54,014 nt of DNA, filler included, from Sluysia triapertura (GCA_046118255.1; 4 parts of 4 records of this genome joined end to end with filler, not necessarily neighbours in it), one strand, 5' to 3'; positions 1,258 through 9,296 are shown, numbered from the whole stretch's first letter. The notes: generated from the sequence alone by a model not told the origin. A program made the numbers and translations.

Positions 1258-2203
1258 TAAATAATAATAATAAATAATAATTAATAATGTAATAATAATA
1301 ATATATTATATTCAAATAATATTGAAAAATGTAAATCATTTTTATTTTTTATTTCTTCTAACTGGTATTTTCAACAAAGCCGTCACTTAATGGACGATTA
1401 AAAGAAGATTAACATATATACTGTAATTACAAAAAATTGAAATATGATCTGGAAATTTAATATTGTATTTTTGATTATAAGAATCTATTGAATATAATTG
1501 TGTGAATAATGAATATTCTTTTGTGATTAAGTTTTAAAATCATTTAATATTTAGAATTAATTAATGAATTTTCTCAACTGACTCTAGTAAATGTACAAAT
1601 TTTCAGTTTATCTATGCTGATATACTCATACCAGTAATCATACCACTCATATTGACTAAGGTTTTCAGTAATCTTTCTTTTATAGAGTATGATAGAGTAT
1701 AAAAGTAAGCATTTTACTGTTAATTAATGTTAACCGAGCATGTTAAGAGTATTTAGATTTCTTATAAACTAAATCTAAAGATAGGTCTTAGAAGTGTTGA
1801 ATGGATCATGCAATATCTACCACATAGTTTTAGTAAAATTTGGTCTAATAATATCGCCATATTTGTGAAACAAAGAAGCTATTTCGCCATTTGGTATACA
1901 GCAACACAATCGCACTGGTGCAAAATGATTATAGTGGTATTGGATTGCTCTTCGCCGGAAATTCTGTCAAATTTCAATTTTTTAAATCAAGAAGATTAAA
2001 TCATGTCCCGCGTCTACGATTAGAGGGAACGATTTTCAACAACACAATTAATTTTCAAGAAGAAATATTTATCCAGTTTTCATATTTGTTAATTAGTCGT
2101 AAGTTTAATTTACATAGGTTTTTAACTTTCTTAAGAGTGATAAATTACACTTAAAATATCCTTTTTCATTAATGCCAATCACAAAATCTATTTTAACATA
2201 TAG

Positions 2204-2220
2204 TTGGCCCTTAAGGTTAA
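2204..2220 (+). other. CTTAA-loop hairpin, degenerate copy (TTGGCC-CTTAA-GGTTAA)
   Basis: 6-bp stem with two G-T pairs and the same CTTAA loop and C-G closing pair as the four canonical copies; lies 50 nt after the + ORF ending at 2154. Confidence 0.4.
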
Positions 2221-3155
2221 TGATAAAATAAATTTTGTAGGGTAGAGTCTTCTGGGCTAGACCCTTACTATACTTCAATTTTTATTGTTATTATAATTTT
2301 ATCATTTTTGATATTTTATATTATTGATACTAATTTTGCTGTATTTTTGTATATTTGAATTAATTTTATCATAATTGAGTGTAATAAAAATATCGAGGCT
2401 TTAGTATTCTTTTTATTTGAATTAAATATATAATTAATCTATCTTTTTTAAGTGATTTAAAGTTAACTAGAATTTTAACCCAGAATATCTTAATTGCAAT
2501 ATAATTTTATTAAACTTAAAAACTTTTTCGGTCATCATATTTAGACTTAAAAATATAACAGACAACGCATTTCTACACTCTCATTATCCACGTAAAATTC
2601 TTGTAATAATTCAATTATCTTTTAAACTAACGTTGGTCTTAATTAGTTAATTAGTTTTTTAAGTTATTTGTTGTTAATTGACATAGACGACGATTTTTGC
2701 CCATTATTGTTAAGTTAAGGCGAAGCATCTTTTTGTACGATTAATTTTGACAATTGCTTTCACGTAATTTTTCACAGGTACGCCATTAGTAAGTCGTATA
2801 CTGTAAACGGACTCATAATAATTAGTTATTGTGCTATAGGTTAGGTTTTTAGGTTACGAAAACACCCAGCAACTCTGTTTCTAGCAAGGTCCTTTGGTAG
2901 ATAATTCGATTTAACGAATTACTTCTGCTTCTGTAACCTTAACACTAGGTATTTTTGATAAATTAATATAATCATTATCATCAAGATTCCACATACCGGC
3001 GATTGACACTTCAAAATCACAAAAACATTCACTTCAACATTTTTAAAAAATACTTATTTGCAATTTACGTTCTTACCTGTTTCTTTATATTTTTTGCTAA
3101 TTACACATGAAAATTGATATTATGTATATACTTTATATTCAAATATTTGAATTAA

Positions 3156-3362: not shown

Positions 3363-4625
3363 TTAAAATTAATCAGTTATTTACAAAAGAAATTAATTAA
3401 ACATGACAGTAATAAATAATTTAAGTGAGATAAATATAGAACGACAATATAAACAATAATATGCAAAGTGAAATAAATAAATAAATAGAATGCTTTAGGC
3501 ACTCAAAAGTAGTTGTAGAAGATTATGATAATATATAAACAAAGGTAGTATAACAAAACTTACGAAAGAACTCGAATAATTTTAAAATAAAATAAATTTG
3601 AAGATTCAATTAAAATGTTACAAAAGAATTATTAACTAAAACAGATATGTATGTACATGTATACATAATCGTCGATTAATAATTACTGTCATTAATTGTT
3701 TTAACACAATCAAAGTCTATTGCATATTATTCGGTCAAACTTGTTTACATCAATTTGTAAATTAATAATTCAAAAAATTCTAGGGGATAACATGATCATT
3801 TGTTATCTGATGTCGCTAAAAATAAAATCAGGAGAGAAGTTATTTAATAAGTTTTAATATCTGAATGAAAAATTATTTCTATTACAAAATGAGATCAAAA
3901 TTGATAAATACAAATTATAAATTAAAATTAATATATTTTTGGAAAGAATTATTTACAAATTATACAATATTGACAAAATGGACCATAACAATTTAAAATA
4001 TATTTTCACTACAATGATAATAGTAATAACAATGATCGTACTGAAGGTGCTATAGGTTATGGTATAGTATTTTAAAAAGTTTTCGTTACAGAAAGAACAT
4101 ATACTATAAAAACGTATCGAATTTTTTGCAGTTAGATAAAATATTTGAAAAGTGAGAAAGATGTTATGTTATAGTGGATGTTTAATATATTTTTATGTTT
4201 TTATGAGTAATGGTTTGGGCCGCCACAAATGATTCAAAAATTACCATACAAAATTTCATTTTTAATAGTTTTATGCCATATTTCACTCATATTTGTACTA
4301 AAATGAAGTTTTGAAATTCTTTATTTTTCTCATAAAAACCAGTAACCAATGGGTTGATTTTTATTACTAATTTCATAGTTTCCATAAATTTTATATTTAT
4401 GTTTTATTAATTTAATTTCTGAATTAATTTTTAATTTAATTTTTATTATTAATTTAATTTTAGTTCCAGACCTAACAGAGGATTGAATCTGTAAGTCCTT
4501 GTAAATCAACAACAAAACTCGAAGGAGTTTTTATTTTCATTTTTATCTAAGTACCCTAATAGGCGTTTGCATTAAAACTTGCTAATTCACTGTCGAGGGC
4601 ATTACATTGTTTAACCTTTTAAAAT

Positions 4626-5705
4626 TTAATTTATTTTATTTTTACTTGTTTTATCAATTACTCTTAATAAGAGAATCAATTCTAACTTAAAACAATTTGA
4701 ATTAAATTTATTTATATTTGCAAACAAGGGCTTAAGGCCCGTAACAATTAAAAAACAACAAATTATTAAATGATTTATTAACACGGCTGGACCTATCAAC
4801 ATTATAATATTTATAACATAGTGTGATAAATATAAGATATTTAACAAAAATAAAATAACCAGTGAACACGGAAAACACCAAAATATATGATCAGAAATAA
4901 AAGTTTTAGTCATTAAATAAAAAGTTAGCAGCACAGCAAAAATAACCACGTTTTCATCGTAATAAATTCCAGTTGTACTTCGACTTGGATAAACAAGAGC
5001 GACTGCTATGATAGAGACAGTAAAACAAACAGCATCATTATTCCACATTTCTTTAATTAATAAAATTGTTAACAAAACCGCAAAAGAACTAAAAATGGGT
5101 CTCATTAACATGAAGACTTCTCTGATATGAACTAATATTGATAACATGTCAAGAACGTAATGTACCAGTCCAGACGTTAACATTAATACAGGACAAATTG
5201 TCCCTCGTTCAATTCTTCTTAGCAGATACCAAACTTTATCATCGAACCAATTGATAAATTCATAAAAAGCTTCATGAACTAATTTAAGTGTTGAACGATA
5301 CTTGAAACATGGATCAGATTCATGAATAATATTTTCGTAAGGAATGACAGAAAACCATCTTGAATAAAAACTAATTGTACATGCTACTACCAAAATTAAA
5401 GTTGTAGATATACTATGACTGATATAACATTCAAATATTCCATGTGGTTTTGATATACAAACCATAATGAGTGAAATTAAAACGATCATTTCGGATACAT
5501 GGAGACTGTTTTTAACTCTTTTAACATTACTATAAATCAAATTTTCATTTACATGGTCGTATTTGAGTAAAAAATAATGGCAAGCATATTCGCTAATGGA
5601 TATTAAAGCTAATGCCGTAATGAAATAAGCTCTATTTGCTTTGTTAATTTCTTTAATTGTAGCATTTCTAGATATTTCCAATATTTCATAGTAATTCAAA
5701 CCCAT
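4626..5705 (-). CDS. Chimeric 359-aa ORF: DNAJB13 exon 1 + unknown membrane-protein segment + degenerate STT3 fragment + AT-rich tail containing the hairpin
   Basis: Uninterrupted frame. aa1-23 are a J-domain start, aa~97-284 are STT3-like, and GLKP is encoded by the hairpin at 4728-4740. Expression unknown. Confidence 0.6.
   Translation of the reverse strand: MGLNYYEILEISRNATIKEINKANRAYFITALALISISEYACHYFLLKYDHVNENLIYSNVKRVKNSLHVSEMIVLISLIMVCISKPHGIFECYISHSISTTLILVVACTISFYSRWFSVIPYENIIHESDPCFKYRSTLKLVHEAFYEFINWFDDKVWYLLRRIERGTICPVLMLTSGLVHYVLDMLSILVHIREVFMLMRPIFSSFAVLLTILLIKEMWNNDAVCFTVSIIAVALVYPSRSTTGIYYDENVVIFAVLLTFYLMTKTFISDHIFWCFPCSLVILFLLNILYLSHYVINIIMLIGPAVLINHLIICCFLIVTGLKPLFANINKFNSNCFKLELILLLRVIDKTSKNKIN
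4728..4740 (-). other. CTTAA-loop hairpin (GGGC-CTTAA-GCCC)
   Basis: Perfect 4-bp stem inside the 3' end of ORF 5705-4626, read as G-L-K-P. Confidence 0.75.
4854..5417 (-). pseudogene. STT3: Degenerate N-terminal fragment of oligosaccharyltransferase catalytic subunit STT3
   Basis: SRWFSVIPYENIIHESDPCFKYRST...FYEFINWFDDKVWY...HIREV...SRSTTGIYYDENVVIFA follows the STT3 pattern SRLF.VI.FESIIHEFDPWFNYR...NWFD.R.WYPLGR...SRSVAGSYDNE.IAI. The EFDPW and DNE motifs are altered, and the C-terminal WWDYG domain is absent. Confidence 0.9.
5638..5705 (-). pseudogene. DNAJB13: DNAJB13-like first coding exon (68 nt)
   Basis: MGLNYYEILEISRNATIKEINKA; homology stops after 68 coding nt (GC of Ala23), the position of intron 1 in human DNAJB13 (c.68). 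No GT follows. Confidence 0.8.
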
Positions 5706-5927
5706 ATTTAAATTTATTTTTAGTACTCAGTTAGTCAATAAATCATTATTTATTATTAAATTCATATATATTGCCATCAAATATTGTTTCACATAAATCA
5801 TAAACATAAATAAATACAAATCGCATAAATTGTGCTTTTATTTACATAAAATATGATTAAAATAATTTATGTTATCATAAAACGTGATTATTAAAATGAT
5901 TCAAGCTATAAAAATGATTTGAGTGTT

Positions 5928-6380
5928 TTATTTAATTACAAAATAAACTTCTTCTAATGTTAACATTAAATTTCTTTCTATAGGCGGATCTTGAATTTTT
6001 CGACCACGACCATATAAACCACCAAAATTGAAATGCAAATCTCCGTCAATGTGATCAAAGAATTCTTGGAAGGGATTATCAGAACTGTAAAATTCCATAA
6101 ATGTTCTTAAAGGATTTCCATGATAAGTATATCCATCAATCCATGCATTTTCACTAATTGCGTTTTTTGGTACTCCAGTTTCCAAGCCTTCTTCACCGAA
6201 TTGATCATAAATACCTCTTTTTCGTGCATCAGACAAAACATCGTAAGCTTCGGAAATCATTAAAAATTGATCTTGAGCACAATCTGAATATGGATTTCTT
6301 TCTGGATGATAGCGTAACGACAACTTTCGATATCGATGAACACAAATAGTGGGTGGTTCGGATAATTTATGATTCTCCAT
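5928..6380 (-). pseudogene. DNAJB13: Chimeric ORF: foreign 47-nt 5' segment (6380-6334) + DNAJB13-like exons 2-4 (6333-~5940), truncated
   Basis: YRKLSLRYHPERN...EAYDVLSDARKRGIYDQFGEEGLETGVP...GYTYHGNP...DNPF...QDPPIERNLMLTLEEVYF is DNAJB13-like (HPx variant of HPD, no G/F-zinc region). No AG acceptor precedes it, and the C-terminal half is missing. Confidence 0.85.
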
Positions 6381-6859
6381 ATTGATTAAATATGTTTTGT
6401 CGTAAAAAAAATAAAACAAACGGAGAGATAGATTGATAATAAGAATAAAAAGGAAATAATACTAATGATAACAATTATGTAGTTATTATGTTTATTAATA
6501 CGGAATTGTTGAAATTTATTATGACAATTATTATAAAAGTTATTATTTGGTATTTATTATACAACAATAATGATTATAATTTTTTTACACATGTTTTAAT
6601 ATGATATGAATCGTAATAATAATAGCGATAGCTGATGATAGTTAGATGTGATGGTCATGTTTATTTTTAAATGAGTTTAGTAGTTTGTTTAATAGTTTGT
6701 GTATATTTGGAGTGTTTTTATGCGATGAATTGTGATGAATTTTATGTGATGAATTCCCTACAATGACCAAGGAATCTATACTGAAAAATAAGATGGAAAA
6801 TTATTCTTATCGACAAAAAATTATGGTTACATGTTGCATGAGGTACTTTTATTAAATTG

Positions 6860-8066: not shown

Positions 8067-9296
8067 TTGTGCGTCGTTGAAAATTTCTACAATGAAAATA
8101 CATCTAAATACAATGTCAATAATTTAAAGTTAGCTCTTAAATTTATAATTCTTGTCAGTTTTGCAGTATTATCGACAAATAGGAGATGTGTAGCAGACGA
8201 TAACTTTGATTTAACTGTAAGATTTATATTTCATTTTTCAATTATAGTTTCGTACCTTTACACTCCATTTACGAATGAAATAATCGAATATAGACATTTA
8301 GTAGGACTTCATCATGTTGTATTATTATCTATTTTATTATATGTTCTATCGAAAATGATTAATGTTTCAGTTTATGATTACAAATTTTTGCCATTATTTC
8401 AAGTAAACTTTGTTTTGTTTTGTATCAGAAGTCTTAGTTTCAATTTACTAATAAGTATTTTTCTCATATCATATGGATTCGTTTTATTCTCTGCACGTTT
8501 ATTATGGCTACAGACATATTTATCCGATAAACTACAAATAGAATATTATTGTTTTTGTAAATTGCAATTTATTGAAAACGATTGTTTTTATAGAAATCCA
8601 ATTTATCCAAATTATATTATATTTCAAAATCATTCTTCTAAAGATGATGATTCGATTAAAACATACGAAAATGTAGAATTTATTTTATCATTAAATTATA
8701 CAGATTTATTTCTCACTCGATCAATAACTATACGTGAGCGAACATTTTCTGGCAGCTATAATTGTGATACGCTTATTAATTATAATAAACATAAATTTTA
8801 CCACGGCAATTTTGGTGATGTTGATGTTATACATACAGATGTACATCGTGAATCGTATAGATTACGAAGAATTAATAGTGAGATAAAAACTGATAGTTTT
8901 TGTATGTCAAAAGAATCATTCTTAGCTCGCAATCATATGTTAAATTTGAAATGTTTAATAGGTGTTGAAAATCCATTATTCGAGAAAATAAATTCTAAAA
9001 GTATAGTTAATAAACATTTAATAACATTAATTATTAGCATTATTTATATTTTAACAATTTTTATGCTCAAAATAAAATTCAACCTTGTTTATTTGTTTAA
9101 TTTGTTGTTTACTAAAGGCCTTAAGCCTACTTTATTAATTGTTCACGAGTTCTATTTAAATTATTTTTCGTTAATTAGAATTTTTAACTTTTCTAATAAC
9201 AATTTTAAAACACAAAAACAAAGTTTAATATTTTTAATAATTGTTATAATTTTAAAAAGAAAAAGCTCTCTCAACATACACCTCTCACAATATTAA
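8067..9296 (+). CDS. 409-aa ORF of unknown, probably chimeric product (multi-TM N-part, possible decayed kinase N-lobe, tail with hairpin)
   Basis: Longest ORF in the window (TTG start in the track; first ATG is internal). HGNFGDV...RLRRI...E...H.LNL..LIG weakly resembles kinase subdomains I-IV. GLKP is encoded by the hairpin at 9116-9128. Confidence 0.45.
   Translation: MCVVENFYNENTSKYNVNNLKLALKFIILVSFAVLSTNRRCVADDNFDLTVRFIFHFSIIVSYLYTPFTNEIIEYRHLVGLHHVVLLSILLYVLSKMINVSVYDYKFLPLFQVNFVLFCIRSLSFNLLISIFLISYGFVLFSARLLWLQTYLSDKLQIEYYCFCKLQFIENDCFYRNPIYPNYIIFQNHSSKDDDSIKTYENVEFILSLNYTDLFLTRSITIRERTFSGSYNCDTLINYNKHKFYHGNFGDVDVIHTDVHRESYRLRRINSEIKTDSFCMSKESFLARNHMLNLKCLIGVENPLFEKINSKSIVNKHLITLIISIIYILTIFMLKIKFNLVYLFNLLFTKGLKPTLLIVHEFYLNYFSLIRIFNFSNNNFKTQKQSLIFLIIVIILKRKSSLNIHLSQY
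9116..9128 (+). other. CTTAA-loop hairpin (AGGC-CTTAA-GCCT)
   Basis: Perfect 4-bp stem inside the 3' end of ORF 8067-9296, read as G-L-K-P. Confidence 0.75.

What the first reader, a model, noticed from the sequence alone, without database searches (positions are those of the whole stretch)
5638..6380. Circularly permuted DNAJB13, opened exactly at its conserved intron-1 site
Seen: on the minus strand the order is X (MENHKLSEPPTICVH-CG) | DNAJB13 exons 2-4 | ~230-nt spacer | DNAJB13 exon 1 (68 nt) | Y (A-NRAYFITALAL...). Exon 2 precedes exon 1, both joins are phase 2, and neither has GT or AG. Established: human DNAJB13 intron 1 follows c.68. Removing the whole DNAJB13 block joins X to Y in frame (MENHKLSEPPTICVHRNRAYFITALALISISEYACHYFLL...). 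Inference: a circular DNAJB13 fragment, opened in intron 1, entered an intron between X and Y. The transcript was then spliced (X to exon 2, exon 1 to Y) and copied back into DNA. That would mean a circular intermediate plus an RNA step.
Basis: partly seen in the sequence, partly recalled or inferred. Interest (0 to 1): 0.85.

Follow-up and report, generated by a model that had tools for sequence, protein, structure and literature searches.

The report
Swapped-order processed DNAJB13 pieces between repeats
Two intron-free pieces of the cilia gene DNAJB13 sit in swapped order between a retrotransposon-like repeat and a copy of a huge STT3-like pseudogene family; the joins fall exactly on splice sites, so this looks like a chimeric retrocopy made from spliced RNAs, not a circularised gene.

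Summary
On the minus strand the order is: LTR-like repeat holding 'X' (6762-6335), DNAJB13 exon 2 plus 128 nt of exon 3 with no intron (6334-5939), a ~220-nt foreign piece (5938-5720), DNAJB13 exon 1 with ~10 nt of 5'UTR (5719-5638), then an STT3-like copy 'Y' (5637-4588).

The intron-bearing parent gene lies on other contigs. It is 272/273 identical and has intron 1 after nt 68 (..AAAGC|GTTAGT ... ttaag|ATATCG), as in human. Both DNAJB13 ends fall on that intron site to the nucleotide.

- X and Y are not one gene. X lies in a repeat with more than 1500 candidate copies. Y belongs to a processed STT3-like family with more than 500 candidates and its own start codon.
- The spacer is not parental upstream DNA. 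It is the start of a low-copy repeat.
- The block ends mid-exon.
- Nothing requires a circle.

Unspliced relatives show GT or AG at each exact join. The best reading is splice-made chimeric RNAs (repeat to exon 2; exon 1 to the STT3-like element) copied into DNA, probably with template switching.

This is a new variant of known chimeric retrocopies and is moderately interesting.

The parts
6335..6762 (-). Copy of an LTR-like dispersed repeat. It starts TGTAGGG at 6762 and is cut about 60 nt before the usual end. It holds the 'X' start codon (6380-6378).
   Evidence: More than 1500 candidate copies. The 5' boundary is sharp and shared, and most copies read on ..GTGTTCGACAATTA.. to ..GTTAAACA. 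Two copies then share a stretch resembling the complement of a tRNA 3' end. The window copy is a mosaic: 6500-~6366 is nearly identical to C206023, while the last ~30 nt equal C248326, where GT follows ..CATCG.
6067..6334 (-). DNAJB13 exon 2, processed copy. It starts exactly at the parental acceptor site.
   Evidence: 6334-6258 is 77/77 identical to C250085, where ..ttaag| precedes it. A paralogous gene has this whole stretch as one exon ending ..NPFQ|gt. PDB DNAJB13 E 1e-42.
5939..6066 (-). First 128 nt of DNAJB13 exon 3, joined to exon 2 without the intron and cut mid-exon after ..GTTTATTTTG.
   Evidence: 128/128 identical to C187742, where ttttag| precedes it and the exon reads on past the cut. 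A second intronless copy (C230505, 96%) ends at the same nucleotide.
5720..5938 (-). Spacer: the first ~220-230 nt of a low-copy repeat. With the preceding G it reads GTAATT, which is donor-like.
   Evidence: 93% identical to C38745, with six copies in the genome. The family runs at least 900 nt, and its 5' boundary lies 20-40 nt inside, not shown to the nucleotide. It does not match DNA upstream of parental exon 1.
5638..5719 (-). DNAJB13 exon 1 (68 nt, ATG 5705) with about 6-14 nt of 5' leader. It ends exactly at the parental donor site.
   Evidence: C20117 matches 5719-5638 with 2 mismatches, one of them in the 68-nt exon, and continues |GTTAGT. There are 4-9 nt of microhomology (AAAT) at the spacer join.
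4588..5637 (-). 'Y': a copy of a large processed STT3-like family. It lacks the family's own first 24 coding nt.
   Evidence: Pfam STT3 N-terminal 1e-29. PDB STT3B residues 72-275, 1e-46. 576 first-look candidates, 120 scored. The canonical STT3 gene on C206850 has two ~32-nt GT..AG introns where Y is continuous. dN/dS is 1.15 against the closest copy.
5928..6380 (-). Open frame of 150 aa: 16 repeat-derived residues followed by DNAJB13 residues 24-153.
4626..5705 (-). Open frame of 359 aa: DNAJB13 residues 1-23 followed by the STT3-like body.

Best explanation
This is a young chimeric retrocopy built from spliced RNAs, not a circularly permuted gene.

Two chimeric transcripts involving DNAJB13 intron 1 are inferred:
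1. A transcript starting in an LTR-like repeat and spliced from a donor at ..CATCG| into the exon 2 acceptor. It runs through exon 2 and into exon 3, where a copy of a low-copy repeat had interrupted the exon.
2. A transcript from the DNAJB13 promoter whose exon 1 donor was spliced into an acceptor-like site (..ACAG|) 24 nt inside an STT3-like element.

Reverse transcriptase copied the exon 1-STT3 RNA to its 5' end. It then switched, at a few bases of microhomology, into the repeat part of the other RNA and continued through exon 3, exon 2 and the LTR exon. A homology-guided switch onto another LTR RNA would supply the rest of the LTR.

Shown directly:
- loss of an intron;
- nucleotide-exact use of the exon 1 donor and exon 2 acceptor;
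- near identity to an intron-bearing parent;
- the repeat identity of X, the spacer and Y.

Inferred: the two source transcripts, the order of copying, and the enzyme.
For: - Intron removed, with the parent gene's introns found elsewhere.
- Unspliced relatives carry canonical signals at every exact join:
  - exon 1 ..AAAGC|GTTAGT;
  - exon 2 ttaag|ATATCG;
  - Y paralogs ..ACATACAG|AAATAGAGC;
  - the only other repeat copy ending ..GTGTTCATCG is followed by GT.
- The start of Y is a recurrent join. C76413 switches to unrelated upstream sequence at the same nucleotide.
- The same exon 3 cut recurs on C230505. There it is joined exactly to the acceptor-side start of an exon found on C232271 (ttacag|GTGGATTCG, 98%). 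This fits a GTAATT donor created where the low-copy repeat meets exon 3.
- Exon 1 carries only ~10 nt of leader, as expected for an RNA 5' end. There is microhomology at that join.
- The LTR copy is a mosaic next to the join, as expected from homology-guided strand transfer.
- Retroposition is active in this genome: an older 5'-truncated processed DNAJB13 pseudogene exists, and the STT3-like family is processed.
- Multi-template chimeric retrocopies and LTR-mediated retrocopies are documented (PMC2104539; PMC5470649).
Against: - No source locus was found. No LTR or STT3-like element lies in the 6 kb after parental exon 1 or the 2.3 kb before exon 2.
- No near-identical source for Y (best 93-94%) or for the LTR was found.
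- No poly(A) tail, target-site duplication or second LTR was seen in the window.
- The GT after ..CATCG rests on one copy, whose downstream sequence is soon interrupted by another repeat.
- The C230505 copy is 4% diverged while the window copy is 0.4% diverged, yet both share the same 3' end. This is unexplained.
- Read support and expression could not be tested.
Confidence: 0.5

Rival explanations
1. One transcript from a rearranged DNA locus. A partial tandem duplication or other rearrangement placed [3' part of intron 1 - exon 2 - intron - exon 3' - filler - exon 1 - 5' part of intron 1] between a repeat-borne donor and an STT3-like acceptor. The transcript was spliced and retrocopied as a whole.
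For: It explains both exact joins and the retained middle piece with a single RNA. The filler begins with a donor-like GTAATT that is left unspliced here but apparently used in the C230505 copy.
Against: No such locus exists in the assembly. The spacer and exon 1 joins occur only in the window. Exon 1 keeps only ~10 nt of leader, an odd place for a DNA breakpoint but natural for an RNA 5' end. The mosaic LTR suggests strand switching.
Confidence: 0.2
2. Circular DNAJB13 DNA or RNA, opened at intron 1 and inserted between X and Y of one gene.
For: The exon order is a circular permutation, and both ends meet at one intron site.
Against: X and Y belong to unrelated repeat families. The closure joint is not parental sequence but ~220 nt of a foreign repeat, and it starts mid-exon. 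There is no back-splice junction, and exon 1 has no acceptor with which to enter a back-spliced circle.
Confidence: 0.05
3. Assembly artefact: the contig threads reads from several loci (parent, retrocopies, repeats) into an order that does not exist.
For: The assembly is very fragmented (263,945 contigs). Exon pieces of 77-128 nt are identical to the parent. LTR copies share 27-57 identical nt just where the LTR mosaic switches. No second contig carries any of the new joins.
Against: The X|exon 2 and exon 1|Y joins share no sequence that could mislead a graph assembler. Random chimeric reads would not hit splice sites to the nucleotide. The spacer is low-copy and lies within read-pair reach of both neighbours. 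An independent contig (C230505) proves that an intronless copy with the same 3' end exists.
Confidence: 0.1
4. Two-step or DNA-level history: a resident LTR and a resident STT3-like copy already lay here, and a chimeric cDNA was later patched in by recombination or end joining.
For: The DNAJB13 pieces are ~99.6% identical to the parent. Y is only 93-94% identical to its nearest relative (dS 0.06), and most of the LTR is 83-97% identical to other copies. The LTR is a mosaic. Ty-type cDNA recombination is known (PMC5470649).
Against: It needs an LTR and a Y copy already adjacent in the right order. None of four Y paralogs has this LTR within ~2 kb upstream. The missing near-identical sources may simply be absent from an incomplete assembly.
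Confidence: 0.12

Closest known systems
Chimeric retrocopies made by reverse-transcriptase template switching (bipartite and tripartite LINE chimeras, PMC2104539; LTR-mediated retrocopies after Derr 1991 and Tan 2016 as reviewed in PMC5470649)
   Same: Intronless pieces of several transcripts are fused head to tail. Joins lie at RNA 5' ends and show microhomology. An LTR flanks the cellular cDNA, and more than one switch is possible.
   Different: Two pieces of the same gene sit in swapped order. Both outer joins lie on the two sides of one intron. Only one truncated LTR is present. No poly(A) tail or target-site duplication was seen.
Retrocopy of an intergenically spliced read-through transcript (PIPSL type; recalled from memory, listed in the references of PMC5470649)
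   Same: Exons of different transcription units are joined at their normal splice sites and then copied into DNA.
   Different: The partners here are repeats (an LTR-like element and a processed STT3-like copy), not neighbouring genes. Two such chimeras appear to be combined.
circRNA-derived pseudogenes (Dong et al. 2016; recalled from memory, not retrieved here)
   Same: Non-colinear exon order is fixed in genomic DNA through an RNA intermediate.
   Different: The defining back-splice junction is absent. Exon 3 is cut mid-exon, a foreign ~220-nt piece intervenes, and exon 1 is included.
Gene-fragment capture by LTR retrotransposons and retroviruses (maize Bs1, Elrouby and Bureau 2010, cited in PMC5470649)
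   Same: Spliced cellular exons lie next to an LTR, with a possible 5' join by splicing from the element.
   Different: No internal retroelement sequence, primer-binding site or 3' LTR is present. The LTR is cut inside its last part.
Protein circular permutation by duplication
   Same: The N-terminal segment ends up after the following segment.
   Different: No continuous permuted reading frame exists. A stop codon and a non-coding spacer separate the pieces, and each is fused to other sequence.

Membership tests
Processed (retro)copy of DNAJB13 | Lacks introns that the parent gene has | tested here: met
   The parent has ttttag| before the stretch equal to 6066-5939, while the window is continuous across 6067|6066. 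Intron 1 is also absent at both outer ends.
Processed (retro)copy of DNAJB13 | Intron-bearing parent elsewhere in the same genome | tested here: met
   C20117, C250085 and C187742, 272/273 identical over the exon parts found.
Processed (retro)copy of DNAJB13 | Poly(A) tail and target-site duplication | tested here: inconclusive
   None recognised at 6762 or after 4588. The A+T-rich sequence makes both hard to call.
DNAJB13 (radial-spoke Hsp40) | Sequence closer to DNAJB13 than to other DnaJ-B proteins | tested here: met
   PDB DNAJB13 chains score E 1e-42 to 5e-40 over residues 24-153, against DNAJB1 at 3e-18. Only residues 1-153 are present, split in two pieces.
circRNA-derived pseudogene | Back-splice junction (downstream donor joined to upstream acceptor) | tested here: not met
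   Exon 3 stops mid-exon and is followed by ~220 nt of a foreign repeat before exon 1.
   Only ~14 nt upstream of the ATG match the parent. The rest matches C38745 and four other repeat copies.
Single X-Y host gene with a phase-2 intron | X and Y occur together in other family members | tested here: not met
   Nine LTR copies continue into other sequence. Four Y paralogs have their own start codon 24 nt upstream.
LTR-mediated chimeric retrocopy | LTR sequence on both sides of the cellular cDNA | tested here: not met
   One truncated LTR on the 5' side, with no second copy anywhere in the window.
LTR-mediated chimeric retrocopy | Short similarity at switch points and signs of strand transfer | tested here: inconclusive
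   1-nt and 4-9-nt overlaps at two joins. The LTR is a mosaic, which could also be a natural recombinant or an assembler jump.
LTR retrotransposon LTR (for the X repeat) | TG..CA ends, many dispersed copies, primer-binding site after the 5' LTR, paired LTRs around gag-pol | tested here: inconclusive
   TGTAGGG.. to ..TAAACA, more than 1500 candidates, and two copies share a tRNA-complement-like stretch after the end. No paired LTRs or pol were seen, and contigs are short.
STT3 oligosaccharyltransferase (for Y) | Full-length catalytic subunit including the C-terminal domain | tested here: not met
   Only STT3B residues 72-275 align. The frame ends at 359 aa. dN/dS is 1.15 against the closest copy.

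The most novel reading that the evidence does not exclude
This genome may routinely fix intergenic or trans-spliced RNAs back into DNA.

The same splice-type joints recur with different partners:
- The STT3-like body is joined at one nucleotide to at least three different 5' pieces.
- The exon 3 cut is joined to two different partners.

The STT3-like family of more than 500 candidates is processed and mosaic. If general, this would be exon shuffling by splicing plus reverse transcription, observable at scale in an animal genome. This locus would be a case where both halves of one intron's exon pair were re-partnered in one event.
Probability: 0.2. Interest if true: 0.7.

Novelty: new variant of a known kind. 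Interest (0 to 1): 0.5.

Why it matters
The locus shows at nucleotide resolution how splicing and reverse transcription together can re-partner exons. A repeat-borne first exon replaces DNAJB13 exon 1, and DNAJB13 exon 1 becomes the first exon of an STT3-like frame. Both fusions stay in frame because all the joins are phase 2.

This is exon shuffling caught young: the copy is 99.6% identical to its parent. It also corrects an attractive but unsupported idea of a circular intermediate. Finally, it points to a genome with unusually active retrocopying, including a processed STT3-like family with more than 500 candidates.

Tried and rejected

- The look-up of encoding contigs found neither chimeric frame on record.
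- The search for homologous proteins with Y returned nothing in its length range.
- Rfam gave no spliced-leader or other RNA family in the repeat or near the joins.

**Hypotheses tested and dropped**
- Spliced-leader idea. The motif TTTAATCAATA(A)TG is shared by the repeat and the start of the Y family. It occurs 34 times against 10 for the control. Outside the Y family and two repeat pairs it sits in unrelated contexts with no shared upstream sequence, so the idea was rejected.
- The guess that the exon fused to the C230505 copy is CRAL-TRIO-like found no Pfam support.
- I tested whether C248326 (the repeat copy with GT after ..CATCG) adjoins the parental exon 2 contig through the nested repeat. 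No shared repeat was found.
- I tested whether the window itself carries the C232271 exon downstream. It does not.
- C14398 is not a third copy with the same exon 3 cut. It reads on past that point.

- The joined X+Y and exon 1+exon 2 sequences were not built or searched. Frames were judged from the pieces.
- No consensus of the repeat copies was built.

Full report
**Setting**

The window is contig C76050 of a 619-Mb assembly in 263,945 contigs, about 25% G+C. It has a motile-cilia gene and ~32-nt introns, so it is most likely an invertebrate animal. The organism was not given. All features discussed lie on the minus strand.

Reading 6420 down to 5580 gives this order:
- an ATG at 6380 and 16 codons ending ..GTGTTCATCG;
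- directly after it, ATATCGAAAG.., which translates as DNAJB13 residues 24-153;
- a stop, then ~220 nt with no frame;
- ATG at 5705 and the 68 nt that encode DNAJB13 residues 1-23, ending ..AAAGC;
- directly after it, AAATAGAGC.., which continues as a 359-aa frame.

Pfam sees DnaJ positions 20-63 in the first frame, and DnaJ positions 1-23 plus the STT3 N-terminal domain in the second. Against solved structures the middle block is DNAJB13 at E 1e-42, far better than other DnaJ-B proteins.

**The parent gene**

The parent gene with its introns is present on other contigs.
- C20117 carries exon 1 with one mismatch in 68 nt, followed by GTTAGT.
- C250085 carries the start of exon 2, 77/77 identical, preceded by ..ttaag|.
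- C187742 carries the next exon, 128/128 identical to 6066-5939 and preceded by ttttag|. It then reads on in frame as GCVKKLKISKRV.

From this:
- This species has the phase-2 intron after nt 68, as human does (c.68+1G>C).
- The window lacks at least the intron at 6067|6066.
- The window copy stops in the middle of exon 3.

A more distant paralogous gene (C118506/C228718) has the same intron 1 site. It has exon 2 as one piece up to the 6067 equivalent, and no intron at the cut. The parental stretch equal to 6257-6067 is missing from the assembly.

**What X is**

The 428 nt from 6762 to 6335 belong to a dispersed repeat with more than 1500 first-look candidates.
- Copies share a sharp start, TGTAGGG.
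- Most read on past the window's break for another ~60 nt to ..GTTAAACA.
- After that end, two copies continue together through a stretch that resembles the complement of a tRNA 3' end, while a third diverges there.

I read this as an LTR, by inference. None of nine copies examined continues into Y. So 'MENHKLSEPPTICVH' is a frame inside a repeat, not the first exon of a Y gene.

Only one other copy in the genome (C248326) ends ..GTGTTCATCG. There GT follows, but another repeat interrupts it 45 nt later.

The window's LTR is a mosaic. From 6500 to about 6366 it is almost identical to C206023. Its last ~30 nt differ from that copy at 8-9 places and equal C248326.

**What Y is**

Y aligns with STT3B residues 72-275. 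It belongs to a family with 576 first-look candidates, of which 120 were scored.

The canonical STT3 gene on C206850 has two GT..AG introns of ~32 nt where Y and its relatives are continuous. The family is therefore processed. Against its closest relative Y has dS 0.06 and dN/dS 1.15, which is neutral drift.

Four paralogs carry their own start..TTTAATCAATA ATG AAT GCT ATT GCA ACA TAC AG|A AAT AGA GC... The window's Y therefore begins right after an AG. Another copy (C76413) switches to unrelated upstream sequence at the same nucleotide. The start of Y thus behaves as an acceptor site used with several partners.

**What the spacer is**

The stretch 5938-5720 is 93% identical to C38745 and has four weaker relatives. 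The family runs for at least 900 nt, and homology among its other copies starts 20-40 nt inside the window's piece, so the piece lies at or near that repeat's 5' end. With the last G of exon 3 the spacer reads GTAATT, a donor-like hexamer.

**A sister mosaic**

C230505 holds a second intronless copy of the block (96% identical, frameshifted). It ends at the same nucleotide, allowing for a 4-nt ATTA insertion. There it is joined exactly to the acceptor-side start of an exon present on C232271 (ttacag|GTGGATTCG, 98%).

This fits a source copy of DNAJB13 in which the low-copy repeat interrupted exon 3 and created a donor. That donor was used in the C230505 lineage and left unspliced in the window. 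What does not fit is age: C230505 is 4% diverged and the window copy 0.4%. I leave this unexplained.

**Mechanism**

Every nucleotide-exact join has canonical splice signals in the unspliced relatives. The middle joins (exon 3|repeat start, repeat|exon 1 leader) instead look like an element boundary and an RNA 5' end, with 1 and 4-9 nt of overlap.

The simplest account is two splice-made chimeric RNAs around DNAJB13 intron 1: LTR exon -> exon 2-3'-repeat, and exon 1 -> STT3-like element. Reverse transcriptase would have joined them by switching from the 5' end of the second into the first. A homology-guided transfer onto another LTR RNA would explain the mosaic LTR.

Such multi-template and LTR-mediated chimeric retrocopies are known. 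An older 5'-truncated processed DNAJB13 pseudogene shows the machinery acts on this gene.

I give this account 0.5. The alternatives are:
- a single transcript from a rearranged, partly duplicated locus, 0.2;
- patching of a chimeric cDNA into a resident LTR-Y context, about 0.12;
- an assembly artefact, 0.1;
- a true circular intermediate, 0.05.

**Weaknesses**

- No source locus was found.
- No LTR or STT3-like element lies in the 6 kb after parental exon 1 or the 2.3 kb before exon 2.
- No poly(A) tail, target-site duplication or second LTR was seen.
- No read or expression data were available.

Assembly error is unlikely for the exact joins, because the joined sequences share nothing that could mislead an assembler. 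The link between the outer part of the LTR and the rest passes through 27-57 nt shared by many LTR copies and could be a false thread.

The joined X+Y and exon 1+exon 2 models were not built or searched, and frames were judged from the separate pieces.

Noticed in passing
window 4588-5637 (-) and many contigs (e.g. C212444, C59918, C99768): A very large family of intronless STT3-like N-terminal copies: 576 first-look candidates, with many open frames of 300-430 aa. There are at least two N-terminal subfamilies and internal deletions. The canonical intron-bearing STT3 gene is on C206850. dN/dS is 1.15 for the one pair tested.
   Followed up: partly
window 6335-6762 (-): LTR-like repeat of ~525 bp with more than 1500 candidate copies and at least three variants of its last 60-100 nt. 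The window copy is a mosaic of two variants.
   Followed up: partly
L039 = C230505:2285-2879 (-): A second mosaic: intronless DNAJB13 exon 2-3' (96% identical, frameshifted) fused in frame to an exon of an unidentified gene (parent on C232271), at that exon's acceptor boundary.
   Followed up: partly
L006 = C14398:1202-1541 (-) and onward: An older (76%) 5'-truncated processed DNAJB13 pseudogene with stops. It reads through the point where the window copy is cut. The start of an LTR copy lies ~1.1 kb downstream.
   Followed up: partly
window 12792-12863 (+): A tRNA-like sequence (Rfam tRNA 44 bits; ARAGORN could not assign the anticodon). Neighbouring sequence at 12743-12872 recurs several times on C228718, so it may be part of a tRNA-derived repeat.
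   Followed up: no
window 8067-9296 (+): A 409-aa open frame that looks membrane-rich, with no Pfam match. This is remarkable in DNA where random frames average about 11 codons.
   Followed up: no
window 2086-2874 and C20117:4558-5332: A ~800-nt repeat (70% identity) and a 124-nt repeat (89.5%) are shared between the window and the contig that holds parental DNAJB13 exon 1.
   Followed up: no
window ~5612 (-): The window's Y lacks 12 nt (four codons, QSIL) present in all five compared paralogs. The deletion is in frame.
   Followed up: no
L093 = C206850 (canonical STT3) and L041 = C118506: Introns of only ~32-50 nt with GT..AG ends, a very short intron class in this genome.
   Followed up: no
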